This document shows, piece after piece, positions 1,056 to 19,123 of a stretch of 64,000 nt of DNA (positions are counted from its first letter, which is position 1; every line of letters begins with the position of its first letter). The notes under the pieces are model-generated. The model was given only the letters and a program-made list of their open reading frames with translations. It did no database searches and had not been told where the DNA came from. Source of the DNA: Penicillus capitatus. Taxonomy: Eukaryota > Plantae > Chlorophyta. Location of the stretch: NCBI GenBank assembly GCA_965649825.1, contig OZ287709.1, forward strand, positions 62,001 through 126,000, given 5' to 3'. A program made the position numbers and the translations under genes.

Positions 1056-3938
1056 TCAACGACGACGTCTTCTAAATCGTCTGAACCGTGATTTCTTGGG
1101 TATCTCCGGTTCTGTCCATGGAAGTCGATCTGTAACGATTCGGCTGTTTCGTAGATGTGGCAATTTGACGAGGGCGTCCCTGACTTCTTTTCGATCTTCA
1201 TACCATGATTTATACAACTGGTCGTCTTTGTCTAACCACCATGCAAAATCCCTGTGTCCACGACCAGCAACCACAACAACATCGCCCTTCCGTGCTGTTC
1301 CAATGGCGGCGCGAATAGCAAAGCTGCGATCTTCAATAACATGCCGCTGGATCTCTTTTTGTGCCCGGAATAGCCACTCTTCAAACCACCATGGTACACG
1401 ACCTGGGTCTTGCCAAGGGGAAAGCACCCATAGTTCTGATCTATCGAGGACATCTTCAGGAAAGCCAGCTACAATGTCATCAATGATTTCGTCGGGAGCC
1501 TCTTTGGCTGGTGAATCCGATGTAATAATGACAATATCAGCATGATAGTGGGCGACACTGCCCATCAGAGCGCGCTCCTGCCGAGAATGATGACCACAAC
1601 ATCCAAAAACTAAGAACACTCTCTTTGCACCACACGCCCTGATCTCTTTAGATGTATGGCACCCTTCCTTGTAAATGCGTGATCGTACTTCATATTCTGA
1701 ATGACAGATGTCAGACGTTTCGCAGAATCAGCACTATCAACCACTACTGAAAAATCTTGTCCCTCGTCCACGAGCTCGCACCTAATCCCGGCAGCGTTAA
1801 CAAAGAAAGAGCTTTTAATAGATGCGATCAATCACCGACCGTCCTGGAATATCATCCAGCGATTCGATCCCGGTCACAACAGTTTGCAGTTCAATGCCGA
1901 TCGATATGGCTGTTGCCACCGAGGCAAGGATATTGGAGATGTTATGCTTTCCAACAAGAGGCGTGATGATCTGCATCTTGCCAAGAGGTGTTCGAATAAT
2001 GGCTTCGGATTCCCAGATCGTACTGGACACAGATTCTGTGTTGACATCTGCTGTGGTGTTTAACACAGAGTAGGTCACCACCGGCACCTCGCTGGACTGA
2101 TCAATGAACTCCTGAGCATGTGGATCGTCGATGTTGATGATGACACGCTGCCCATCTGGAATATTCATCTTGCGGAAGAGCCTTGCATAGATCGACTTCT
2201 TCTGTTTAAACGTGTCTTTTGTATCTCTGTCTTCAGATTCGAGGTTCGTGTAGACCATGACGTCAAAATTCACATTCTCCAGACGCCGATCTGTCAAAGC
2301 ATCTACGGTGCACTCGACGATGCAGGCGCGTGCTCCACGGTAGGCCATTCCGGCAAGAATCTTTTGCACCTGACATAGCACAACAATGACGCACACATTC
2401 AAAAAAGACATGCCTTTGATCTGCCTGCAGCGGATCTGGGACAGCACGATCGATGGAATAGCGTCCTTGAAAAGGAGTGAGATGATAAGGTGCTGCTGCC
2501 GAACGATAATATGCAGGATCGTTTTCTGTTGGAATGAAGAGATCACCCTCTGCCGTAAGCTGATCTCCAAGAATGGCGTACTCGATGTCGCACATCATCC
2601 CTGTGCAGACCTTGAACTCCTCAAGGATCTGTCGCAGAATCCAGGCAGTGGATGTCTTGCCATGTGTACCCAGGACACCAATGATTTTCATCTTTGCACT
2701 GGGATATCCTGAACATATACACAAACGTAACTTGATCTGCCCTTCGTCCGTGAACTGACCGTAGAAGATACAGCCGATCGAACTCATAGCATAGGGAAGA
2801 TTCACAACAGGGAGAACGGGAATCAGGGCTTCTATGTCGTCGATGGGTATCCCTTCTTTTTTCAGTGGCCGTTTCCACTGTTCTCTGTCTACACATCGCA
2901 TCACACTATGTGCCGGAGGTTCATTTAAACGCTTCTCTTCATCGACACCGTTTCCGAAAGTAACACCAGGATCTTCCTCTAAGAATATCTCGATGCCGTC
3001 CTGCAGCAGAATGGCCACGGCTCCGTTCTCCACGGCCAATGGAATGTGCTTCAGTCCATCATAATCGTCCGTCTTCTGAGCGAAATAGATACTTCCTGGC
3101 GTCACATTCTCTGCTTGACTGTGCAATCCTGTGATGGTCACATCCTTCCATCCTGGACAAGTCCACGATCAAGACAGCACAATTCTGGGAGATACACACG
3201 TTTTTTAACCATCTGAGCTTCTTCGTCTAATTTGGCTCGATTGAGCAGATCCAGGAACTGCATAGAGAACTGTGGCATGGGTTTGTACGGAAAATCCTCC
3301 AATCTCTTAATAGGCATCAGAGGTGACTCGAATTCGGATTCATAAGCTGAACCATCGAGATAGCTTTCTTCCATGGCTCTGATCTTCCTGTCCATCTTCG
3401 CCAGTTTAGCTTTGGCATTCTCAATGTCCGCTCCCTCGATGATGAGTCTCTCATAGGCCTGCTTGTCTTTCTTTGCAATATCATCAACACCAGTAAGATC
3501 TTCATTCTCTTCGTCCTCTTCGTCCTCGTCGTCTACCTCATCCTCGTCATCTTCCTTTTCCTCGTCATCTTCTGATTCTGATAGCCAGTCTTCAATTTCG
3601 TCATCTTCTGGGTGTTTCTCAGATAGTGGCGAAACCGAATCAGATTCAGACACTAACGTCTCGGCAGCACCCTCATCCTCTTCCTTGCCGAAGATAGATT
3701 CCAAGTCGGCATCTGTCTGCTCATCGAGTTTCCCGTCGTCAGCAAAGGACCAGATCCTCGATGACGGCCTTGTCGACGCAGGGATCGTCTTCGAATCCGG
3801 CCACTTCTTCTGAGCGGCGACGCATCGCTGTCGGATGGTCGATACCCTACTCAATGGTGATCTCCGCCACTCGATCTCCGGAAAGCGCATCCTTTTATCA
3901 AGACCTGCTGCACCTTTCCTCGAAGTCGTCAATCGCAT
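1056..3938 (-). CDS. murE: Plastid-type MurE-like Mur ligase with long acidic N-terminal extension; multi-exon, probably catalytically degenerate
   Basis: Spliced ORFs 3138-3938, 2263-3141, 1815-2570 and 1056-1619 give the Mur-ligase N-domain (VTPGSIYFA), P-loop GVLGTHGKTST, GKHNISNILA, IPGR and the C-terminal GDVVVVAGRGH. The N-terminus is basic and Ser/Arg-rich, followed by a D/E tract. Confidence 0.88.
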
Positions 3939-7278: not shown

Positions 7279-9862
7279 CTATGATCTTGCATCGTTGAGC
7301 AATTCGTATGCCAAGTTCTCAGAGCTGCCTAGAAGCAGAGGGCTCTTGCATCGAGACATTGGAGAGAAGGATAACCCATCATGGCATTAATCTCTTCGCT
7401 TCTCTCTGTTTCCGTCTTCAAGGATCGAAACTGAATCTCCATTTTTCCGTCATCGTCGGCAGATTTCGTCGCCTTGATGTGGGTCGATGCATAGGCTGCC
7501 ACTTGAGGAAGATGCGAGATACAAATGACTTGGTTCTTCACTTCTTTTGCATTCGTACATATGTTTCGGAGTAGTTTTCCAACTGTTTTGCCCAAACGCA
7601 CACCGACGCCTGTGTCAAGCTCGTCCAGAACAAGAACAACACCAGATGCATCGTTCTGGCTCTCTCTGAAGATGGAGACCAACTCCTTGTCATCTCGAAT
7701 CAAAGTTGGTGCTGCCTTGAAGGCCAGCATGATGCGTGCACATTCGCCACCGGATGCCACTCCAGACAGTGCCCTGGAAAAGACGTGACACATAGACGCG
7801 CATAGATGTGATGAATGGCTTGCCTGAGAGGCTCTGTCGGACCAGGAGCAAGGAGAAACTCCACAGAATCGAATCCATCTGCCGTTGCAAGATATCGAGC
7901 ATCACCACGCTCGCCAGCCTCTGTTGCTGTCTCTGATGTGACATACACGCCCGACACTTGCTAAGCACATGCTCCGAACATCTGCTTGGCAAATTCGGAT
8001 CGAAGAGTGCCCACCTTCTGGGTGCTTTCCCAATTAATCCGAATATCGAAGCGACTCTTTTGCATTGCCAAGTCGTAGAGGCAATCCTCAATGGCCTTCC
8101 TTAACTTCCCAGCCATTTCACGACGGGCGAGGCTGAGAGATACACTCTTCCGTATGTACTCCTCTTCGACAGTCGCCAGTTCCGACTCCCAATCCGTTCT
8201 TCGATCTAAAATTCAACGATGACGCTGCGTGAAGATTCCTCTCGCAGTAGCTTACCACAAGAATCCATGTACTGATCCAACCTTGCCTGCGTCTCGGATG
8301 CCAAATCCAACAATTCTTCTGTTGAGCGGCATTGAAAATCCTTAAGCAGCTTTTCGATCTGCCATCATCACAACAGCCAGCTGTCGATCCATCACGTGTA
8401 TGCTTGACATTACTTCTTTCAACCGTTGTCGAAGCTCAGACTGCTCCACCTGGTCAAACTTCATGAAGGAGGCAAAATCCAGAACCTAAACGTCCATTCC
8501 TTGATCTCCAACAGTCCGGGAATCCATCACACGTCTTCGGCAGCGTTCTCCAATTCTTTCTCTGCCCTTTCGATGTGCTCCAAGGCATCATCCAAACAGT
8601 GCAGGGCACAATTGATGCTGTTGTCACACTCGTCGATGTCTTCATCTTCTTCACTATCCGTCAGGTCTAGAAACCGACAGGACCTTCAACAAAGCCAGGG
8701 CACTCTTCTTCCACCTGCATTTCGCTGTTCCTGGCGGGCAATGGATTTGATGCGACTGGACACATCTTGCAAAGCATGCGTGATCCCTTCGGAGCCGCCT
8801 AAGGAATAACCATGTACAGATCTCCATCCTTTGGTGCTGTCTTCAATAAGATCTCACTGTCCAGGCTCCTTCCAATCCCAACGGCGGCTTCAACGGAGCA
8901 GGCATGTGTTTCCAACACTTGCAATGCATATCTCAAGTTGCGTTCCTCTCCTGGACCAATGCCGGCCATGGTCACTTCTTCGCAGAGCCTCTCTGCCTCC
9001 TCCCGTATCTCTTTATCTTCAAACTCGGAAGACACAGACAGCTGCAGAATAGCAACATGACGAAGCACCAACATCGAATGATGGACAAACCAAGGACTTC
9101 AGTTCAGACATGCGCTCGAAAGTGTTTGCAATCTCTTGTTGGAGTGCGGACCGACCGGTGATTCGATCGATGAGTGCCATCTGTTGTTGCTTGTTTCCCA
9201 GCTGAGTGACAGCGTACTGCCCATTGATGTCGAAGAACACCTCAGCTAGCGCCTTCAATACGCGGACGGAGACTGGATCACCATTGACAAAACAACGACT
9301 CCTCAATCCGCTGACCGTCTGCGAAATCTGATGACCGCCATGATCACCATCACTTCGACCCATAGAGAGAGATGCGACCTACCTCCCGCCTCAAAACAAT
9401 ATCGCCGCCGACATCGTCTTGTAGATGGGCCAGTCCGTGGCCATGAACGTCAAATTGTCGAAAGAGTGCTCGAACACGACGCATGCCGTTTGCCGCCAGA
9501 TGAAAAGTTGCCTCAAGCGCAGCACTGTCGCAGGAAGGACGAACGCAGTTTCCCAACGACGTCTTTCCCAACACTTGACTCAATGCCTCGATCAGCACAG
9601 ATTTTCCAGCGCCACTCTCGCCTGTCACCACATTGAATCCCGGATCGAAGAACACCTCCTCTTTCTTGACGAGGATGAAATCTTCAATGTAGAGTCTCTT
9701 CAGATAAGAGGCGTCTGGATGAAAGGCATCGTGGATGACAGAAGAGCTCTTGTCATGTTTGTCTCCAAAGGACGACGCAGACAGGTGTCTCTCGTCAGCA
9801 GAGAAAGAACTCCGCAGCAGAAATGACTTCGAGACACGTCGACAGGGGACACTCTCTATCAT
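7279..9862 (-). CDS. recN: Bacterial-type DNA repair protein RecN (SMC-like) with N-terminal organelle-targeting-like extension
   Basis: Walker A TGESGAGKS, FFDINGQ, central coiled coil, signature ASGGE, Walker B VLDELDTGVG and H-loop ISHLPQVAA. The last intron gives the ending MMGSSENLAYELLNDARS*. Confidence 0.9.
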
Positions 9863-10271
9863 ACAATGACGCACGCACTTATTAAGAGGGAACGATTGTC
9901 TGCGTCACACTTCCAAGCATTTTCTCGCTTCTGTGAGAACTCTGTCTGAAGAGTGGTTTTCCACATCTCCAAAGAACGCGATGCGCGTTGCCTTCGTAGC
10001 TGGTAAGACGATCGGCTGATAAGAGAGCAGTCTGCATGATTGCGTCACATCGAACATTCTGTGTGTTGTGTGTGCAGTCTAGTCTCCTCTCGATACCTCT
10101 GATAATGTTTTGAGCGCTTGTTTGACAGACGGATACATATTGAACGAGTAGGACACCATTAAGGCAGTCTTGTCGCATGACCCGCGGTCTCTTTTGAACA
10201 GGATTTGTTCTTTCTTGTTGTTGGACGACGGTTCGGTTTTTCCTGACGTTCGTTCGCTCGCATATCTATCA

Positions 10272-11561
10272 ATGGGTTGTATGTGCAGCATCCCGTCCGT
10301 CACTGTCTTCGAGAACAAAGGTGCGCCGACTACCTATACGGCATGCATTGAATTGTCTGGTCGACTGCGTTAGGCTGCGTCAGCGGAAAGTTCTCGGGTT
10401 CGACACTTGCCCCAACGAAATCGATGTTCCGCCGAAAGCACTCCACGTGCGAGGAGAAGATGGACCGCGGCATGTCGGTGGCGCAAATTGTCAAACTGTG
10501 CTATGAAATGGTGGATCAACGCTTTCAAGGTCTCTCCCTACTCGACTGCTCTGTGATTGTCTTGATGACGTGTGCCCATCTGCAGGTCTCGTGGATCCAA
10601 TCATGGTCGCGGCAATTATCATCATGGAGAGCGCAGGAGTTGCAGATTCGTGTCGGTTAAGAGAGGACTTCCGAGAAGCTGCCTATGGCTTGGGACAAGT
10701 ATCATCCATTGCTCTCTTCTCACACAATCCAAATGTGTGATGCATTAGATGTTGTTCTCAACTGCCGAGTTCTTGATGAAGTCGGGATATGACGCCTTCC
10801 CTTTGGCGCGTCCTGAGGATCTCTATAATCCGACCATTGCCGTCTATTTTGTCTGTGCCTGTGTTGATTACTTGTCCAAGCACGAAGACACAGGAAAGAG
10901 TGAGGAAGTCATCGTGAAGTCATACCACAATGGATCATCACACATGGAGGAAACGCCAGCTGAAGTGTGGGATGTCTACTTGAAAGCACGCAGTCAACTG
11001 ATTCGTTTGAAAACAGCAATGGATTCCCCACCCACAAAACAACTGATCTATGTGGTGCAGTCTGGTGAAAGCCTCGAGCTCATTGGACGCGTCTGCGGTG
11101 TTTCTGTCCAATCCATCATGGATGTTAATCCAGACGTGAAGGAGGCAGACAACATCCAGACAGGAGATTGCATCGAAATTCCGGTTGAGAAAATCCTGCC
11201 CAGATTCTACGTGGTCAAACCGAATGAGTCTGTGGAGTCCATTGCGCAAAGACACGATGTTTCACTGTTCAAACTCTATGGAGCCAATGCAGATCTGAAG
11301 AATTCAGTTGCACTCAAGCCTGGATGGATTCTATCCATTCCTGGACTCAAAGGAAATGCGTTGGATGGCAGATTGCGGAGTGATCTCATCTCAACAGGAA
11401 TCGACGATGGACCATTTTTCCTTTCATCTTTGGCAGAGCATGAAGCTGTGAGAATGGACGAAGATGCCATCTCTGGAAGCATGGCACGAGAATATCTAAG
11501 AAGAAGTTCTTACAGCCGATCTGCCATACAAAAAATCCTGAAACGAAACAGTCCAAACTAA
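10272..11561 (+). CDS. Lytic transglycosylase (SLT/GH23-like, plant At1g16290 type) fused to two LysM domains, with N-terminal MGCMCS acylation motif
   Basis: Exon 1 (10272-10320) is joined by a 53-nt GT-AG intron. The spliced protein has LVDPIMVAAIIIMES (catalytic Glu), YGLGQMLFSTAEFL and SEEVIVKSYHNG, then LysM1 YVVQSGESLELIG...IQTGDCIEIP and LysM2 YVVKPNESVESIAQRH...LKPGWILSIP. Confidence 0.85.
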
Positions 11562-12113
11562 TTCGTGTGAGATTGGTGCTTGTCGTCTTTTCATCTTTCT
11601 TTTCCTATGGATGTCCCATCCTCTTACCCCGACAACATCAATAATACGATGACATACTCTCGGCTCGGCAACGACCAGTCTTCCTGAGCTGCTTGGCTCT
11701 TTCAACAAGGAATGCAGCCGGACAATTCAGAATGGTTTGCCTCTACCTCTTTCTAATTCACTGTCCTTGTGAGTTCTGGCATGTCGATCGGTTGGAAGTG
11801 CCTTCCCAGAATGGTTATACGGAGAGATTGGGACGGATTTTGTGGATTGGACAGTATAACGTGACCGATGATTGTTTGAATAATCGCTTTTAGAACTCTC
11901 AATACTGAGTACTATCCAGTCATAAAGTACGGGTATCGCAGGAATCAATTTACACGCACAATAATTTGAAATTGTGTGATTTATTCAATCTCTTTAGGCA
12001 GCCATTCGCACGAAGCTCAGTGTTTGTGTAATAAACATGACACCGCTCCATTCGAGAGTATTCCATGCCAGACCATATCCATGATGCCACCAAATCATCT
12101 TTGCAAGCATCCT

Positions 12114-12670
12114 TCAAAAAACAAGATTAGTACTGCGTCTGTTTAGTCTTCTACCGTCATGGTGTTTGTCTTTCTCTTGTGGATGTGGACGATTCGGGCG
12201 ATCGTCTTCATCCGTGTCACTGTCAGACCATTCCCCGAAAGCTTGCCTCTTGTGAAAGATGCAGCATACTGGTCACAAAAATGCACAAAGGGCAATGAAT
12301 AGAGGAATGGGATATCTATGGATCGAACTCTTGGACGATTTCTTTTGTAGATGTTCATTGTCCACAACATCCGAAGTCCATCGGACAGTCTAGAATGATG
12401 ACACAAGACACCATCATTGTGAAACAAGACTGAGACGATTTCAGGTCACACCACCTTTTTCTTCCTCCGCCTCGATGGATTCAGCGTCAGAGTCAATACC
12501 GTTTCTGCATAGACAAATAGACATTTGTGTGTATTAGATAGGAAAGGAAGTCAAGCGACACGGTGTCGTCGGTACTCGCCTGAAGGAAGCTGGGTGTTTC
12601 CATTGTTCTCTCCTGAAGGTGAGACACAGAATCCCGATGAGCCAGTCTCGGCTTCGATGCGTCCAGACAT
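12114..12670 (-). CDS. INH3: Protein phosphatase 1 inhibitor-3 (YPI1/PPP1R11 family); not captured as one ORF in the ORF track
   Basis: Four exons splice to ...[56 protein letters not shown]..., containing the RVxW-type PP1-docking motif and the KKSSKxCCI family signature. Confidence 0.9.
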
Positions 12671-12784
12671 TGCACGACTCGCAGTAAGAATAATGCAAAT
12701 GGTGATGATCTGTCGACGACCATTTTGAACGAAGCAACGCGTCCTGATCTCGTTGTCGTCGTTCTTCTCAACGAATTCCCGACT

Positions 12785-13567
12785 ATGGACGGCAACGCCG
12801 AGCCGATTCTCGATGTCGTGCGCGGGCTGAGCACGGTAAACAGCAACACATATGAAGAGTGGCGGCGCACGCACGCACGGTTGCGTTGTTCTGCATAGGT
12901 CGCTTCTGTGAGCATCTTCGCAACGCAGGTTAAGAATATCTACGCGACTCTGTATCGTTCCAAATGCAAGAGATGTCGTGGTGCTGGGACGATCATCTGT
13001 CGTCACTGCCACGGAACGAAGATTCGGAGAACGTACCCTGTGCAAGCATTCGAGGGAAGTCCCAATCTGGAACACCCGGCATTCCGATACGAGTGTTATC
13101 ACTGTGGACCCTATGCTATGAACGATTTTGATTACGACAAGGAGGGAGATGACGAAGAGGCTTGGAATATCATGGACAATCTGAAGGCAGCAATGGCCAA
13201 TCGAACACGGCCTCACAGACCGAAGGCAACGGCAGGAACAGTCCCTTGTCCCGTTTGCTACGGACAGTGTGTTGTCCGTCGTCATACTCCAGATTTCGAA
13301 TCTCTATTTAGACTGGACGGCACGTGGATAGATCAAATAGCGAGAAAGAATGTGCATCGGGCTTCGCCGTTGAAGAAGCTCGATTTCGCCGAAGAGATAC
13401 TCGTCGGCAAACCGCCGAAGAAACCGCCAGTCAAGAAGAAGCTGCCGAACATTCGAGGAATCGAAGGCAGATCCATGGACGAAGTCATTCTGCCCTATGT
13501 CGATGATTCGGACACGACAGAGAGCTCAGACGACGAGTATGATGATGATGACGACGACGAGTTCTAA
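12785..13567 (+). CDS. DnaJ-like zinc-finger (CxxCxGxG) protein with acidic tail
   Basis: ATG 12785, one intron, motifs CKRCRGAG, CRHCHGTK, CYHCG and CPVCYGQ; no J-domain HPD motif seen. Confidence 0.75.
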
Positions 13568-13713
13568 TGTATGTGCGACAACGAAGTCGATGATCGTTGT
13601 AAGTCGTATGCTTGTTTGTGTGCTGGCCGCTTCCCAAAACGTCGCAGTGCGCCACACAGCCTGATGTGACCCGTCTCGCGTTGTGTTGACTATTCGCCGA
13701 GTCGCACAACGTG

Positions 13714-15025
13714 ATGACGACGAACACAGAACTCGTTGGAAAAGTGACTGGGTTGTACGTCTATCCCATTAAGGGATGCAGGGCTATTAGCGTCACGGCA
13801 CTTCGAACGACGCCAAGAGGTGGGTGGTGTTGGAAATGGAGCACGTGGGAACACAAATGGAGAAGGAGGCGCTTTTAGGATTTCCTTACGATCGCCATTG
13901 GGTGGTGGTCAAAGAAGCGACACATCGCTTTATCACACAGCGGAATTTTCAGAAACTCGCAAAGATTCACCCAGTATTGCCGGAGGATATCTTGGGTGGT
14001 TCTGAGCATCTGCCTGAACACCATCTGACCATTCGTTTGCCTTATACGGACACCGATGCGGAACGCATAAAGATACCATTGATACCGAACGGCGATCCTG
14101 TTCTCAAGTGTGAAAGGATCTTTGCGAAGCTCGACGGATGCATATGTCTCACTGCCTGTTAGGCAGATTACTGTCAGTGAGTGGACGGGAGTGGCCATGG
14201 ACGAAGGCGATGGGGCGGCTGAAAAGCTGAGTAGCTTTCTGGAAACACCCGTTCGGCTATTTCGTTTCATTTCAGATGCAGAGATTCGACATCGAATGCC
14301 GAGGGAGAGGATAACACGTCCAGTGAACCCAGAATTTGTCTATGGCTTTGAGACCACGTTTACAGACGGATTCCCGTATCTTATCATCAACGAAGTCACA
14401 CTTCCCCTCTCTTGTGCCCTTTTCCATAGCTCTGTTGCAGATGTCGTATCAGAACCTGAAAAAGGCAGTCGGTACAGAATTCCCCATCGACCGGTCAGAC
14501 AACACTGTGCCGCGTACATTGTGCAGACACACTTATTCTCGTGTGTGTTTGTACAGATTTCGGCCGAATATCATCATCGAAGGGCAGAATGCGTGGGAGG
14601 AAGACGAGTGGAGACAGATCCAGATTCTTTCCCGGACAGATCGTAGGTCACATATACCCTTATCAAACAGCAGAACCATGGAGTTGTGGCTGTCTGCAGA
14701 GAGATCCGTTCTCTTCAGATTGGTCAAGCCATGTCAGCGTTGCACTGTCACGTGCATCGATCAATCGACGGGTCTCCCAGGCATCGAGCCTCTAGAGACG
14801 CTTAAGAGTATTCGGAGCGGAGAGAGAACAGGATTTGTCAAGTATTTAAAGGGATCTCGTGGTCAGGGGTTCTTTGGATGGAACGCCGTCTGCAAAGACG
14901 AGAGCGTCATCGCTGTGGACGACGTCGTCGCCGTCGCCAAGTATGGCATCTGGGCGTCAGGCCTATCCCTGACAGAATACGCACAGTATGCATGGCAGTG
15001 GATGCGCGACAAGACAGGCCTTTAA
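13714..15025 (+). CDS. MOSC-domain protein (mARC / molybdenum cofactor sulfurase C-terminal family)
   Basis: LYVYPIKGCR, YDRHWVVV, FITQR, FTDGFPYLII, RFRPNIII, KPCQRCTVTCIDQ and FFGWN motifs across exons. Confidence 0.9.
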
Positions 15026-15088
15026 CGGGAGTCGTCGCCGATGCCGATTTAATTGTTTGATTTTCCGAGAATTGTTCGTGAAAGACAG

Positions 15089-16030
15089 ATGCCGGGCGAG
15101 TCAAAGAGAATCGGCAGTCCTCAAGGAGGACAGAGCGTCGACCAGCCAACCCGCCGAGGTCCTCGAACGCGGAGTATGGCGAGCAAAGAGGCAGAACAGG
15201 CCGCACAGGTACATGCAGCACCACGCGCCTTATCGAAAGGTTTCCGTTGGTTCGTGCAGTCTCCCGGGAACGGCGAAGGTGGAGCGACTGGAAGCGAAGT
15301 GAACAACGAAGGTGGCGGATCGCCGTCCTCAAACGAGTGTCCTTCTCCAATTCGCACAAAGAAACCGCGACGCGTAACGATAAACGAAATCACAGAGGAG
15401 CGAGAAGCGACGGCGACAGTAACGACAGAGACCATTCATGCGCCTCCTGAAGGGGATAGCGGCGAAGAGGAACGCGTTGTGTATTACTACACGCAGTACT
15501 TGTGTCTGTCTTTGTGGCGGGCGGTGGAGAACTGTCAAGTGTGGGACTACCGTCTTGTCAGGGCGTTCTGCCAAGGACCTCGATCATTTGCAGAGAAAGT
15601 CAATGAGATCGCACAACAACTGGGCCGCCGTTTTCGCAGCAACGGAGAACATGATGTCACGCCCGAAGATGTGACGCGATCATACCTGAGAATGTTTCCA
15701 GTGACTGGTCTGTTCAACTGCTGTGCAAGGTTATGGCAAAGATACGTGAAATTCCATCGCCATGGTGCTCGGTCATTAAAAAGAAAAAAGCCAGAGAGAG
15801 AATCCGACAGTGACGCAGCAGAGCATGACAGATTCTCCGTGTTCATGGAAGGAGAGGGACCCTCCAAAAAATACAAGCATCGTTTCCTGATGGATCCGCC
15901 TCGCATTATTGTAAGACATCTTTGCCGTGTGTGGAATCTGTCAGACAATGTGTGCCCGGTGGCGATGGTGCAGATACTGAGCGGTCCTGAGAAAACAGGG
16001 TTCGACGGTGAAGCTGAAATGGATGAGTAG
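15089..16030 (+). CDS. Hypothetical intronless protein (disordered N-half, helical C-half, basic KRKK motif)
   Basis: Uninterrupted reading frame of more than 300 codons; first in-frame ATG at 15089; no family recognised. Confidence 0.65.
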   Translation: MPGESKRIGSPQGGQSVDQPTRRGPRTRSMASKEAEQAAQVHAAPRALSKGFRWFVQSPGNGEGGATGSEVNNEGGGSPSSNECPSPIRTKKPRRVTINEITEEREATATVTTETIHAPPEGDSGEEERVVYYYTQYLCLSLWRAVENCQVWDYRLVRAFCQGPRSFAEKVNEIAQQLGRRFRSNGEHDVTPEDVTRSYLRMFPVTGLFNCCARLWQRYVKFHRHGARSLKRKKPERESDSDAAEHDRFSVFMEGEGPSKKYKHRFLMDPPRIIVRHLCRVWNLSDNVCPVAMVQILSGPEKTGFDGEAEMDE

Positions 16031-16241
16031 CGAGAGCGAAGAAGATGTATGGACGACGCGACGTGGCGCGACAGGAATGACATAAGATAAACAAACTCCA
16101 ACGGGATCGTCAGCTCCGTAGGACCTATCTCTGCGATTAGATAAGATGTGTTTACATGCGTGTAGCGGCTGCTCATTTTGAATCCGCGACGAGGCAGGAT
16201 CGAAAACGACTCTTTAAACGTCTGTCGCTTTTCACATGCAT

Positions 16242-19123
16242 CTATTCGGCCATCTGAATGTAGTCAGGATTTGGCTGAAGAATGACGACTCCCTCGAGAA
16301 CAGGAGAGAGTGGAATGTATTCTTCGGTGGCCAATTCTGCACGTTCGCCCACTGCCAGTAGGACAGGTGTGTTGTGTGTCTGGAAGCCAGTAATGGTTTT
16401 GGGTCGTCCTGCCTGGGCAACCGTGTCCACTGCCTGACCCACACGCACGGAAACCGGCAGCAGTTTTCCTTCGGTGTCCACCGTCAGTAGATAGCGGGGT
16501 TTCATGGCTGTGGCGAGATAGAATAACATGTAGTGATGCTTGCCGGAGATTGTCTCCCTTAGATCCAAACATGCTGTGAGCACACAGAGAATACCGGAGA
16601 GGGCAATGCTGGACAGCAATTGACGATCCGTGTGATATGGATTGATCGTCATGAGTCCCTTTCCCATGTAAACCAATCCCTGCGCGATGCGAACGAGGAA
16701 GAGCATCGTCTGATCCTTGTAGTAGTAGGATGACAGATTGCGCAGCATTCCAGCCAAACGTGCATTGTTGGTGCCTACGCGATCACTCAGATGTGTAATG
16801 CAGTGCATGAGATTTCTCACCGGCTCCCAAAATGCCGAATGCTATAATGGCATTTCTGGCAACCTCAGGGTCCGAATCGTGACTCAGACGACTGAGGATA
16901 TCCATCGGATAGATGTCAGGATTTGATACATTGAGGAGAGCCAGCGCCAGAGGCACGGCTGAACGCACAGGTGTCTTGCAGTAGAGCAGCAGGTGTTCCA
17001 TCGTGCGGTGAATCATCGACGATCCAAGTTCCTCTGTCATAGCAACGAGGGCAATGCCCATGACGGCCATGCTCTGATGGAATGCCTTCCAGTTCGTATT
17101 GGCTTCTGGTTCTATCTGTTCACCGCATGCTGCCAACCATTCTTGCACTTTCAGCACGTTCCCACTTCCAGCATAGGCACACGCCTCCAGTGTCACCTGA
17201 CAGAACTTTGAGATCTTTTCGTTGAAGGTCTTGGCAATCTGCGACGGTTGCGTTTAGGAGAAGAAAGAGAAGAGGGATGCATGCCTCGATCGTGGCTTCC
17301 ACACGTTCCTGCTTGCCAAGGAAGAGCATGCCCATACCCAGGCACAGCATCTTTGCGTACGGCGACGTCATGTGACTCTCATCGCGCACCATCAATGCCT
17401 GTGTCGCATGCGATCTCAGATATCGTAGGTGTTGTGTCTTGCTTACCTCAGAGATGGCTTCAACGCATTCCTGTTTGCAGGTGCTGCTGAAAACGAGTCC
17501 GAGAGACAGAGCAGCAAAGCCTGTCAACTCAATGTTGCTGTCTGGATCTGAGACCAGTGGCAGGAGAAGCTCTTCGACCTCTGCTCGACAAGTACCCGCA
17601 TAGGCCAATCCCAAACCGATGACCGCTCCAATGCGAACATTCAGATCAAAGTGATTCACGTGCTCAAAGATCAAAGCGTATGCCGGATCGTTCTCGTTGT
17701 GTACGCAACAATTCACAAGACCTGACAGCAGAGAGTGAACACGGACGTCAAAAGAAAGGATCTGAGCCGTACCAATGGCCAACAGAGCACCGGCAACAAC
17801 GTAGTTGTCCGAAATATATAAATACCGGTCGATCTGCGAGAGTCCCCCATCCACATCCCACATTGTGATCATTCCCAGACTCGCTGTGGCACTCATCTTT
17901 CCGTGCTCTCTGTTTCGGAAGATCCAGTGTGGCTGCTGTCCGGTATCGGCATCTCCAGAGACGGTGACCAATTTATCTTGGCCGAATCCGGCATTCACAA
18001 ATCCGTTCACAAACGTGCTGGCCAGATTGTGCCTGGCTGAGTCCACAGCACGACTGGAAGGTGCACGCCCCTCGACCAGATGCATCTTATAGACATCATC
18101 CGGAACTTTGGGCTCCATCACATCCAAGTCACGAGCCAGTTCCAGGAAAGATTCACTGAGTCTTGAATTGCTGATGATCTCTTGAATGGAATCTCGCACC
18201 GTCTCATCTGCGATCGCCGTCGGACCTTCTTCCAAATCCAACAAAACGCCTTGCCGTGCCAATAGATGACCCAGCTGGCTCTTCTCCAGCGCATTCTCAC
18301 AGGACGCAAATGTCGATTCGATCAGTGGACGATCGTTGAGTCGTAATGCAACGCGCATGGCGTCGTGGTACATCTTGCGATGTGCATAGATGCCGTGTGC
18401 GACCTTCAGGACAGTGACATCGTCTGGTTCAGCCAGATACTGACAACAGGATGTCAGGTATAGACAGGCTCGGCGATAGTTTCCGTCGTCCACATATTTC
18501 TCGAGAATGGGCAGCTGGTCGACCTCGATGAGCAAATCAACAGCCTCCGGTTCTGCGTTGTGTGACATGTGATACGGAACGATCTTCTCCACCAGCGCCA
18601 ACAACTGCTTCGCCGTTCCTGGATCGTCGCGCGTTTCTGGGAATGCGGCTGTGAGTTCAGCTGTCAGATTTCTGAGGTATTCGTGCCCCCAAGTGCCAAT
18701 GTCTTCATCAGATCCGAGGAGACAGTACTTTAGTGTATCTCTGTCCCCCTCTTTCGCACAAGTGGATGCCAATGTGGATATCACATCTGCCAACAGGCGT
18801 GCATTGTGTTGATGCGCCGTCGTCCTGTGTGCTTCCTTCAGACGGTCGTAATGCGGACGCAAAAATTTGAGTGGCTTTGGCACGGACGTCATGGATGTCG
18901 TGGCACTGCGAATCTCTTTCCGAACGGACTCCAATGCCACGGTCTTTGCTGTCTCGTCGTGCGTTGTGACGATATCTTCAACAAGTGCCTCCAGTTGTGT
19001 CTTCAGTGCCAGTTCCTCGTCCGTCAAATCGGCATCTGGGTCCACGACTTGCTCACGGGGTTTCTTCTTTTCTGCTTTGGCTTTTGTCAGTTCGCCCTTC
19101 GATGTACCCTCTGACGTCGGCAT
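16242..19123 (-). CDS. RPN1: 26S proteasome regulatory subunit RPN1 (PSMD2)
   Basis: [75 protein letters not shown] and [11 protein letters not shown]...[12 protein letters not shown]. Confidence 0.97.

What the first reader, a model, noticed from the sequence alone, without database searches (positions are those of the whole stretch)
10272..11561. Lipid-anchored lytic transglycosylase-2xLysM: candidate intracellular antibacterial or peptidoglycan-sensing enzyme
Seen in sequence: a small first exon missed by the ORF track gives MGCMCS, which has Gly2 (N-myristoylation) and Cys3/Cys5 (S-palmitoylation), and there is no signal or transit peptide. The SLT domain keeps its catalytic Glu (IIMES) and GxxQ (GLGQ) motif, and two LysM domains follow. 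Established knowledge: SLT/GH23 enzymes cleave peptidoglycan glycan chains and LysM binds GlcNAc polymers; as I recall, land-plant At1g16290-type SLTs lack LysM. Inference: a muramidase-like enzyme tethered to the cytosolic face of membranes, where host peptidoglycan should be absent, suits surveillance or control of intracellular bacteria, or release of muropeptide signals. The nearby MurE looks inactive, which argues against a role in a plastid wall.
Basis: partly seen in the sequence, partly recalled or inferred. Interest (0 to 1): 0.72.

Follow-up and report, generated by a model that had tools for sequence, protein, structure and literature searches.

The report
Lipid-anchored peptidoglycan-cutting enzyme of green algae
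A siphonous green alga encodes a bacterial-type cell-wall-cutting enzyme (SLT plus two LysM domains) with a conserved fatty-acid anchor signal that should hold it on the cytosolic side of a membrane, and its relatives across green plants carry other anchor signals of the same kind, so a whole plant enzyme family seems to sit where no known substrate lies.

Summary
Window 10272-11561 (+) holds a four-exon gene with three GT-AG introns of 53, 56 and 50 nt. It encodes 376 aa: MGCMCS, a disordered linker of about 45 aa, an SLT/GH23 domain with its catalytic Glu, two LysM domains and a disordered tail.

A 90%-identical orthologue has all its indels inside the three introns. An intronless relative maps exon by exon. 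The start MGC.C recurs in at least 11 chlorophyte homologues, including Caulerpa (two copies), Bryopsis, Ostreobium and Hariotina.

New here: the SLT domain belongs to a family found across green plants. 104 of 120 land-plant members (double SLT, no LysM) end in a CaaX prenylation box.

The best whole-architecture fold match is the bacterial lipoprotein MltD.

The proposed function, control or sensing of intracellular bacteria, remains inference. The family is ancient, not a bryopsidalean invention, and persists where plastid peptidoglycan is thought lost. I found no literature on it.

Verdict: real, a new variant of a known kind, substrate unknown.

The parts
10272..10320 (+). Exon 1 (49 nt). 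Start codon and MGCMCSIPSVTVFENK. Gly2 is the myristoylation site and Cys3/Cys5 the palmitoylation candidates (codons 10275-10286).
   Evidence: First in-frame ATG after the stop at 10149. 94% identical in orthologue L001, with 2 of 3 changes synonymous. MGC.C conserved in homologues.
10321..10373 (+). Intron 1 (53 nt, GT..AG)
   Evidence: Only 59% identical to L001, with an 8-column indel, while the flanking exons have none.
10374..10529 (+). Exon 2 (156 nt). Disordered Ser/Thr/Lys/Arg-rich linker and the first helix of the SLT domain.
10530..10585 (+). Intron 2 (56 nt, GT..AG)
   Evidence: 3 gap columns against L001.
10586..10698 (+). Exon 3 (113 nt). SLT catalytic helix IIIMES (Glu83 codon at 10627-10629) and GLGQ (10687-10698).
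   Evidence: Glu-Ser is invariant in 14 of 14 aligned homologues. The family's IES Glu lines up with the IES motif of E. coli MltE in the profile alignment; E64Q is listed as the inactive mutant, and equating the two positions is my numbering inference.
10699..10748 (+). Intron 3 (50 nt, GT..AG)
   Evidence: 7 gap columns against L001.
10749..11561 (+). Exon 4 (813 nt). Rest of the SLT domain (to about 11030), LysM1 (about 11040-11186), LysM2 (about 11208-11342), disordered C-terminal tail (about 11349-11558) holding the motif DLISTGIDDGPFF (conserved within Bryopsidales), then the TAA stop.
10463..11030 (+). SLT/GH23 domain as a whole (residues 47-200, interrupted by introns 2 and 3)
   Evidence: AlphaFold2 pLDDT is mostly above 90 over this span. 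Foldseek matches MltD, MltE and Slt70. The profile against PDB hits MltE at 2e-9.

Best explanation
The locus encodes a 376-aa protein of a siphonous green alga (Bryopsidales; closest named relative Caulerpa lentillifera).

Shown:
- The four-exon structure.
- An SLT/GH23 lytic-transglycosylase fold that keeps the catalytic Glu-Ser.
- Two LysM glycan-binding domains.
- No signal peptide or transmembrane segment.
- An N-terminal MGCMCS conserved through chlorophyte homologues.

Inferred, step 1. N-myristoyltransferase acylates Gly2 as the protein is made. Cys3 and Cys5 are then S-palmitoylated. The enzyme is therefore held by a flexible 45-residue linker on the cytosolic leaflet of a membrane. 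The streptophyte branch of the same SLT family instead ends in a CaaX prenylation box, which also gives cytosolic-face anchoring.

Inferred, step 2. The LysM pair holds a GlcNAc-containing glycan strand. The SLT domain cleaves it at the membrane surface, as the bacterial lipoprotein MltD does on peptidoglycan.

Inferred, step 3 (least certain). The substrate is peptidoglycan, or muropeptides, of bacteria that reach the cytoplasm. Such exposure is plausible in wound-prone, endophyte-bearing coenocytes. This makes the protein a cell-autonomous antibacterial or muropeptide-processing enzyme rather than a plastid-wall enzyme.
For: - Gene model and selection.
- Domains: Pfam SLT 29.9 bits (cut-off 21.3) and two LysM at 60.2 bits.
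- Structure: the AlphaFold2 model has a confident SLT domain and two LysM domains, with residues 1-46 and 307-376 disordered. The top Foldseek hit is P. aeruginosa MltD with two LysM domains (8rhf, E 2e-8), followed by MltE and Slt70.
- Catalytic residue: Glu-Ser is invariant in 14 of 14 homologues and lines up with the IES motif of MltE.
- N-terminal anchor: the PROSITE myristoylation pattern plus a Cys at positions 3-6 is met by the window protein and by P0005, P0010, P0007, P0008, P0009, P0013, P0015, P0017, P0027, P0026, P0049, and internally by P0004 and P0014. The next 40 or so residues are not conserved.
- C-terminal anchor in relatives: 104 of 120 land-plant relatives end in C-a-a-X (CTIL, CSIL, CSIM, CTIM and others) and have acidic N-termini that do not look like targeting signals. 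The fern Adiantum protein ends in CSVQ.
- No hydrophobic N-terminus.
- Against a plastid-wall role: the family is present in a chlorophycean (Hariotina) and in angiosperms. [quoted passage not shown]
- Context: endophytic bacteria in Bryopsis and Caulerpa are on record, as references cited in PMC13680199.
Against: - No lipid modification, localisation or enzyme activity has been measured. The PROSITE pattern is permissive.
- The 46-residue N-terminal region is rich in Ser, Thr, Lys and Arg, with net charge +4. It could pass for a chlorophyte transit peptide if the protein escaped acylation.
- No peptidoglycan is known on the cytosolic face of plant or algal membranes.
- The family is conserved in lineages with no known cytoplasmic bacteria, which argues for a housekeeping role not yet imagined.
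- Catalysis is not universally kept. 21 of 120 land-plant proteins have lost the Glu in domain 1, and domain 2 lacks it almost always.
- The Ostreobium-type proteins have GLCL instead of GL.Q.
- The window protein has SYHNGS where the wider family has YNGGP.
- LysM domains also occur in intracellular proteins with no known glycan ligand, for example the trypanosome mitoribosomal uS10m.
Confidence: 0.5

Rival explanations
1. Plastid envelope enzyme. The N-terminal 45 residues act as a transit peptide. The SLT-LysM protein remodels residual plastid peptidoglycan, or a peptidoglycan-like layer, during chloroplast division. It would be a descendant of a cyanobacterial MltD-like enzyme.
For: - The MltD-like architecture and fold.
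- The N-terminal region is hydroxylated and basic.
- The four genes MURE, DDL, MRAY and MURG persist throughout Viridiplantae (PMC4815162).
- Some chlorophytes, including the ulvophyte Ulva mutabilis, are thought to keep a peptidoglycan layer (PMC10784329).
- A MurE-like gene lies 7 kb away.
Against: - The invariant MGC.C start contrasts with the variable sequence that follows it.
- CaaX boxes in 104 of 120 land-plant relatives imply modification in the cytosol. That prenylation is cytosolic is established knowledge.
- The family is present in a chlorophycean and in angiosperms, where the full pathway is absent.
- The neighbouring MurE-like gene has several altered motifs by eye.
Confidence: 0.12
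2. Cytosolic-face protein with a substrate or role other than peptidoglycan. It could bind or trim chitin-like or other GlcNAc-containing glycans, such as free N-glycan cores or nascent polysaccharide at a synthase. Alternatively it could act mainly as a non-catalytic LysM adaptor.
For: - LysM domains bind chitin oligomers as well as peptidoglycan, shown by the PDB hits Ecp6, CEBiP and CHIP13.
- MltE and MltD crystallise with chito-oligosaccharides (4hjy, 8rhi).
- The catalytic Glu has been lost in 21 of 120 land-plant domain-1 copies and in nearly all domain-2 copies.
- The LysM part is more conserved than the SLT part between the window and L001, with 7 non-synonymous and 22 synonymous changes against 21 and 31.
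Against: - Glu-Ser is invariant in all chlorophyte SLT-LysM proteins examined.
- The nearest solved relatives are all peptidoglycan lytic transglycosylases.
- No candidate endogenous polymer is known.
Confidence: 0.22
3. Surface enzyme delivered by unconventional export. Dual acylation takes the protein to the plasma membrane. It is then flipped or released to the outer face, as described for the Leishmania SH4-domain protein HASPB (recalled from memory). There it attacks epiphytic bacteria or generates muropeptide signals.
For: - The N-terminus is of the same type, Met-Gly-Cys.
- The extracellular side is where peptidoglycan is actually met.
- Bryopsidales carry dense bacterial communities.
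Against: - No evidence for such export in green algae was found.
- A CaaX-anchored streptophyte branch is hard to fit with export.
- The two conserved Cys residues in LysM1 are not invariant across the family, so no disulfide signature of an oxidising compartment is present.
Confidence: 0.08
4. Mis-modelled gene. Exon 1 is not used, and the protein starts at the internal Met34 or Met46 without a lipid anchor.
For: - No RNA-seq data exist for this organism.
- In-frame internal ATGs exist (ORF 10424-10660).
Against: - Exon 1 is conserved, with mostly synonymous changes, in L001.
- The same N-terminus lies in contiguous ORFs in L002 and L003, with upstream in-frame stops and no earlier ATG.
- Independent gene models in Caulerpa, Bryopsis, Ostreobium and Hariotina share the same start.
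Confidence: 0.03

Closest known systems
[quoted passage not shown]
   Same: A lipid-anchored protein made of a family-1 SLT catalytic domain followed by two LysM domains. It is the best whole-chain Foldseek match (E 2e-8). The catalytic Glu-Ser is kept.
   Different: - MltD is anchored by a signal peptide plus a lipobox diacylglyceryl-Cys, and it faces the periplasm.
- The algal protein has no signal peptide and has a eukaryotic Met-Gly-Cys acylation motif, so it should face the cytosol.
- Sequence similarity is low: 14-17% identity in the fold alignment, and 30 bits against a cut-off of 508 for the NCBIfam MltD equivalog.
- By profile, the SLT domain is closer to MltE than to MltD.
Land-plant and streptophyte 'Transglycosylase SLT domain-containing protein' family
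   Same: The same SLT subfamily (E 7.8e-40 to the chlorophyte profile; grouped in the tree). No signal peptide. A predicted lipid anchor on the cytosolic side.
   Different: - Streptophyte proteins have two tandem SLT domains. The second almost always lacks the Glu.
- They have no LysM.
- Their anchor signal is a C-terminal CaaX box (104 of 120) rather than an N-terminal MGC.C.
- No functional study was found (0 papers).
SH4-type dually acylated proteins (Src-family kinases such as Lck; plant CBL and CPK proteins; recalled from memory)
   Same: An N-terminal Met-Gly-Cys-x-Cys-Ser followed by a flexible linker. This is the textbook signal for myristoylation plus palmitoylation and for attachment to the inner leaflet.
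   Different: Those proteins carry signalling domains such as kinases or Ca2+ sensors. None carries a glycan-cleaving domain.
Host-encoded peptidoglycan enzymes that manage symbionts or pathogens (aphid AmiD, LdcA and RlpA; PMC9116674 and PMC8689515, listed), and fish goose-type (GH23) lysozymes that lack signal peptides (recalled from memory)
   Same: A eukaryote uses a bacterial-type peptidoglycan-cleaving domain inside its own cells.
   Different: The insect genes are recent horizontal acquisitions tied to particular symbionts. This family is ancient across green plants and is lipid-anchored. No goose-type lysozyme appeared among the PDB sequence hits.

Membership tests
SLT / GH23 family-1 lytic transglycosylases (Pfam PF01464) | Profile score above the Pfam gathering threshold | tested here: met
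   29.9 bits against a cut-off of 21.3, residues 71-174.
SLT / GH23 family-1 lytic transglycosylases (Pfam PF01464) | Catalytic Glu in the Glu-Ser motif at the end of the hydrophobic helix | tested here: met
   Glu83-Ser84 (IIIMES). Invariant in 14 of 14 homologues. The family's IES lines up with the IES motif of MltE in the profile alignment; E64Q is listed as the inactive mutant.
SLT / GH23 family-1 lytic transglycosylases (Pfam PF01464) | The G-L-x-Q and A-Y-N-x-G motifs (consensus recalled from memory) | tested here: inconclusive
   GLGQ is present in the window. Bryopsis has GLCQ and Ostreobium has GLCL. The third motif reads SYHNGS, against YNGGP in the wider family.
SLT / GH23 family-1 lytic transglycosylases (Pfam PF01464) | Lysozyme-like alpha-helical fold | tested here: met
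   AlphaFold2 pLDDT is mostly above 90 over residues 47-200. Foldseek gives probability 1.00 to MltD, MltE, Slt and Cj0843.
SLT / GH23 family-1 lytic transglycosylases (Pfam PF01464) | Cleaves MurNAc-GlcNAc bonds and forms 1,6-anhydroMurNAc | not testable with these tools
   Needs an enzyme assay.
LysM (Pfam PF01476) | Profile match and the beta-alpha-alpha-beta fold, in two copies | tested here: met
   60.2 bits, two stretches. The model shows E-H-H-E elements twice. PDB hits are to LysM pairs.
Bacterial MltD | NCBIfam equivalog NF008050 above its cut-off | tested here: not met
   30.4 bits against a cut-off of 508, and only over LysM.
Bacterial MltD | Lipoprotein signal peptide with a lipobox Cys | tested here: not met
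   No hydrophobic N-terminal segment, and the Cys sits at position 3 directly after Met-Gly.
Bacterial MltD | SLT domain followed by two LysM domains | tested here: met
N-myristoylated and S-palmitoylated (SH4-type) proteins | Gly2 in the context G-{EDRKHPFYW}-x-x-[STAGCN]-{P}, with a Cys within residues 3-6 | tested here: met
   MGCMCSI fits the pattern, as do 11 other chlorophyte homologues and two with false 5' extensions.
N-myristoylated and S-palmitoylated (SH4-type) proteins | Lipids actually attached, and membrane association dependent on Gly2 and the Cys residues | not testable with these tools
   Needs metabolic labelling and mutant localisation.
Streptophyte At1g16290-type SLT proteins | Membership of the same SLT subfamily | tested here: met
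   The chlorophyte profile hits Trapa (7.8e-40), Spirogloea (1.7e-48) and Closterium (1.5e-38). All are placed in one tree, with the basal split unsupported.
Streptophyte At1g16290-type SLT proteins | Two tandem SLT domains and a C-terminal CaaX box | tested here: not met
   The window protein has one SLT domain and ends in KRNSPN. The plant proteins have two SLT stretches, and 104 of 120 end in CaaX.

The most novel reading that the evidence does not exclude
Green plants and green algae share an ancient, undescribed family of peptidoglycan-type glycan-cleaving enzymes that are lipid-anchored to the cytosolic face of membranes. Chlorophytes use myristoyl and palmitoyl anchors and add LysM domains. 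Streptophytes use a prenyl anchor.

The family would be a cell-autonomous system that detects or destroys bacterial wall material entering the cytoplasm. That would make it a plant and algal counterpart of animal cytosolic surveillance of bacteria. One Closterium gene model even joins two SLT domains to a guanylate-binding-protein GTPase domain.
Probability: 0.2. Interest if true: 0.85.

Novelty: new variant of a known kind. Interest (0 to 1): 0.62.

Why it matters
Lytic transglycosylases are regarded as periplasmic or extracellular enzymes of bacteria and phages. A conserved eukaryotic branch that carries no secretion signal would place a peptidoglycan-type enzyme where no substrate is known. 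In this branch one clade has an N-terminal acylation signal and the other a C-terminal prenylation signal.

Two outcomes are possible. Plants and algae may meet bacterial wall material in their cytoplasm far more often than assumed, which is relevant to endophytes, to wound healing in coenocytes and to the long debate about residual plastid peptidoglycan. Otherwise the fold has acquired a new endogenous substrate.

Either outcome is directly testable, because mutants can be sought in Arabidopsis and RNAi has been reported in Bryopsis (PMC12961179).

Tried and rejected
- The word-indexed profile search added almost no named chlorophyte homologues. Breadth therefore rests on the exhaustive representative search and on three cluster look-ups. 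Several MGC.C homologues (P0013, P0014, P0015, P0017) remain without an organism name.
- The source organism of the window could not be named. The nearest named relative is Caulerpa lentillifera, at 45-48% identity. The 90% orthologue is an unnamed ENA assembly.
- Literature searches for At1g16290, for lytic transglycosylase with chloroplast and green algae, for CaaX with transglycosylase, and for LysM in Bryopsidales papers found nothing relevant.
- NCBIfam gave no family above its cut-off.
- I considered reading the two conserved Cys residues of LysM1 (Cys222, Cys247) as a disulfide that would mark an oxidising compartment. I rejected this because the first Cys is Ser, Tyr or Asn in other family members.
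- I considered the C-terminal hydrophobic stretch of the MMETSP protein P0102 as a tail anchor. I did not rely on it, because the segment contains Lys and Arg.
- Bacterial MltD-like sequences (P0171, P0179, P0182) were too distant to pass the domain filter for the tree. The bacterial origin of the family is therefore not resolved, and the basal split in the tree is unsupported.
- No second copy of the gene exists in the window.
Full report
**1. What is in the sequence**

Window 10272-11561 (+) reads as a four-exon gene. The exons are 10272-10320, 10374-10529, 10586-10698 and 10749-11561. They are joined through three GT..AG introns of 53, 56 and 50 nt into a 1131-nt coding sequence of 376 codons plus TAA.

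The start codon is the first in-frame ATG after an in-frame TAG at 10149. It sits in an A(-3)/G(+4) context.

The rest of the window carries ordinary nuclear eukaryotic genes with short introns. These include RPN1, a PPR protein, a purple acid phosphatase and an SMC_N-like gene. GC content is about 49%.

**2. Is the model real?**

Three independent lines say yes.

- *Orthologue.* An ENA contig (L001) is 90% identical at protein level and has the same structure. Exons are 88-94% identical with no indel. Introns are 59-80% identical and contain every indel (8, 3 and 7 columns). The coding sequences differ at 67 synonymous and 40 non-synonymous codons, a pattern of purifying selection. Exon 1 has 3 changes, 2 of them silent.
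- *Intronless relative.* P0004 is a single ORF in a JGI metagenome contig (L002). It maps onto the window as four HSPs that coincide with the four exons. Its own MGC start is the first ATG after an upstream stop. The same holds for L003.
- *Protein alignments.* They run across all three junctions without gaps at the junctions.

**3. Domain content**

- Pfam finds SLT (29.9 bits, cut-off 21.3) and two LysM domains (60.2 bits).
- An AlphaFold2 model built on a 14-sequence alignment gives a confident SLT domain (residues 47-200) and two LysM domains (204-306). Residues 1-46 and 307-376 are disordered.
- Foldseek against the PDB puts P. aeruginosa MltD with its two LysM domains first (8rhf, E 2e-8). 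LysM pairs, MltE, Slt and Cj0843 follow.
- A profile of the SLT part alone hits E. coli MltE at 2e-9, and the family's IES motif lines up with the IES motif of MltE. The E64Q mutant of MltE is listed as inactive, and I take the two Glu positions to be equivalent.
- Glu83-Ser84 is invariant in all 14 aligned homologues.
- GLGQ is present here but is GLCQ in Bryopsis and GLCL in Ostreobium. The third family-1 motif reads SYHNGS here, against YNGGP in the wider family.
- Hydropathy shows no signal peptide or transmembrane helix. The only hydrophobic window is the buried catalytic helix.

**4. The N-terminus**

The decisive point is conservation. The following proteins all start Met-Gly with a Cys within residues 3-6:

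- Caulerpa lentillifera g8706 and g9046
- Bryopsis sp. KO-2023
- Ostreobium quekettii
- Hariotina reticulata (MGQCCSC)
- several unnamed chlorophyte proteins (P0008, P0013, P0015, P0017, P0027, P0049)
- P0004 and P0014, once false 5' extensions are discounted

The following 40 or so residues are essentially unconserved. A fixed N-terminal tripeptide ahead of a variable disordered linker is what a lipid-anchor signal looks like.

**5.

An exhaustive profile search plus cluster look-ups place the SLT domain in a family spanning Viridiplantae.

- *Chlorophytes.* SLT plus two LysM with an MGC.C start in Bryopsidales, the chlorophycean Hariotina and unnamed relatives. SLT plus one LysM in unnamed proteins from metagenome, metatranscriptome and sequencing-run assemblies, starting MGCCFS (P0049) or MGNKAT (P0066). 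A Tetraselmis variant is also present.
- *Streptophytes.* Mesostigma, Spirogloea, Closterium, the fern Adiantum and angiosperms have a double SLT and no LysM.

A maximum-likelihood tree of the SLT domains gave these groupings:

- The window groups with Caulerpa (100/99).
- This lies inside a bryopsidalean group (84/83).
- The streptophyte domains form a supported clade (99/99).
- The basal split is unsupported.

This is compatible with vertical descent, but the tree does not prove it.

**6. The land-plant relatives**

Of 120 proteins retrieved with the Trapa natans member, 104 end in a C-a-a-X box. The endings were CTIL in 37, CSIL in 20, CSIM in 13, CTIM in 11 and CIIL in 8, with others less frequent. 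Two of the other endings (GMKR, DMKR) match the residues just upstream of the box in full-length members, which suggests truncated models. The fern protein ends in CSVQ.

Their N-termini are acidic (MAVSFKYWDDCVDPQDMEAMW...) and are unlike targeting peptides.

CaaX prenylation is carried out by cytosolic enzymes and yields cytosol-facing anchors (established knowledge). Two branches of one SLT family thus carry different lipid-anchor signals at opposite ends, and neither has a secretion signal.

A caution applies to catalysis. In land plants the Glu of domain 1 is kept in 99 of 120 proteins and replaced by Ala, Gln or Gly in 21. Domain 2 almost never has it. Catalysis is therefore not indispensable everywhere.

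**7. What it most likely does**

*Shown:* architecture, fold, retained catalytic residue, anchor motifs and their conservation.

*Inferred:*

- The protein is myristoylated and palmitoylated. It hangs from the cytosolic leaflet on a 45-residue flexible linker.
- Its LysM pair captures a GlcNAc-containing strand and the SLT domain cuts it. This is the working mode of the bacterial lipoprotein MltD, transposed to the other side of a eukaryotic membrane.
- The substrate is the weak link. Peptidoglycan or muropeptides from bacteria reaching the cytoplasm is the most economical guess, for two reasons. Every solved relative acts on peptidoglycan. Bryopsidales are wound-prone coenocytes with recorded endophytes.

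The family's age and breadth argue against a role tailored to bryopsidalean endobacteria.

**8. Rivals**

- *Plastid-wall role.* It is disfavoured by both anchor signals and by the presence of the family in lineages thought to have lost the plastid peptidoglycan layer. It is not excluded, because the N-terminal linker has transit-peptide-like composition and some ulvophytes may keep the layer.
- *Non-peptidoglycan or non-catalytic role.* It is supported by the losses of Glu in plants and by the promiscuity of LysM for chitin.
- *Unconventional export of a dually acylated protein.* It is possible but has no support.
- *Wrong gene model.* It is very unlikely (section 2).

**9. Comparison with the known**

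The protein works like MltD but is not a member of that family. The NCBIfam MltD equivalog scores 30 bits against a cut-off of 508, and there is no lipobox.

It is a member of Pfam SLT and Pfam LysM. It is the chlorophyte sister type of the uncharacterised land-plant 'transglycosylase SLT domain-containing protein' family. It fails that family's double-SLT and CaaX features.

I found no paper on the plant family or on LysM proteins of Bryopsidales. Database names are 'hypothetical protein', 'LysM domain-containing protein' and 'Transglycosylase SLT domain-containing protein'.

**10. The MurE argument**

A MurE-like gene does lie on the minus strand at about 1056-3141. Pfam gives Mur_ligase_M 82 bits and Mur_ligase_C 48 bits, with a weak N-terminal domain. 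The P-loop GTHGKTS is kept.

Several motifs look altered when compared with consensus sequences that I recalled from memory. That is an impression, not a test. MurE persists throughout Viridiplantae regardless of peptidoglycan. It adds little either way.

**11. Verdict**

The functional inference is open.

This is a new variant of a known kind: a eukaryotic, cytosol-facing, lipid-anchored counterpart of the MltD design, belonging to an unstudied family that spans green plants. Interest is moderately high because the predicted location contradicts where such enzymes are expected to act, and because the question can be tested with standard tools.

Noticed in passing
window 1056-3141 (-): A MurE-like gene in several exons. 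Pfam gives Mur_ligase_M 82 bits and Mur_ligase_C 48 bits. The P-loop GTHGKTS near 2670 is kept. Other ligase motifs look altered by eye, for example TNLESEDRD, DSADSA, GCCGHHS, DSPA and GRGHR, judged against consensus sequences recalled from memory.
   Followed up: partly
P0060 (Closterium sp. Yama58-4, CAI5470597.1), outside the window: One gene model joins two SLT domains to a guanylate-binding-protein N-terminal GTPase domain (Pfam GBP, E 3.7e-34). It could be a true fusion, which would hint at cell-autonomous immunity. It could equally be two merged neighbouring genes.
   Followed up: no
120 land-plant SLT proteins (P0184-P0301, P0056, P0166), outside the window: The first SLT domain keeps Glu-Ser in 99 of 120 proteins and has Ala, Gln or Gly in 21. 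The second domain lacks the Glu in nearly all, most often with Val-Ser. This suggests an active domain paired with a pseudo-enzyme domain.
   Followed up: partly
window 10100-10271 (+): The 5' flank is 93% identical to L001. That matches the exons and is far above the introns, so this is probably a conserved 5' UTR or promoter. It holds two out-of-frame upstream ATGs, at 10105 and 10177.
   Followed up: no
window 11349-11558 (+), residues 307-376: The C-terminal tail is predicted to be disordered. It contains a short motif conserved within Bryopsidales only, DLIS.G.(D/E)DGPFF, with Leu319 and Ile320 invariant. It may be a docking motif.
   Followed up: no
L001 1-12455 compared with window 9350-19123: Gene order is conserved around the gene in the related alga. 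An SMC_N/AAA_23-like gene lies upstream on the opposite strand, and RPN1 lies downstream.
   Followed up: partly
L002 3166-4338 and L003 246-1409: In two relatives the whole protein is one uninterrupted ORF, whereas the window and L001 have three introns. L002 comes from a JGI metagenome contig, which would mean intron gain or loss within the order. L003 may instead be a transcript assembly.
   Followed up: partly
P0099 (Tetraselmis striata), P0005 and P0010 (Caulerpa lentillifera), outside the window: The Tetraselmis protein has SLT and LysM, then a hydrophobic segment followed by basic residues, then a second LysM. This differs from the architecture of the MGC.C proteins. Caulerpa lentillifera has two paralogues, and both start MGCMCS.
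   Followed up: no
window 12908-13567 (+): An ORF of 219 aa with CxxCxGxG zinc-finger repeats of the DnaJ central-domain type (weak Pfam hit, 21.6 bits, below the cut-off) and a highly acidic C-terminal tail.
   Followed up: no
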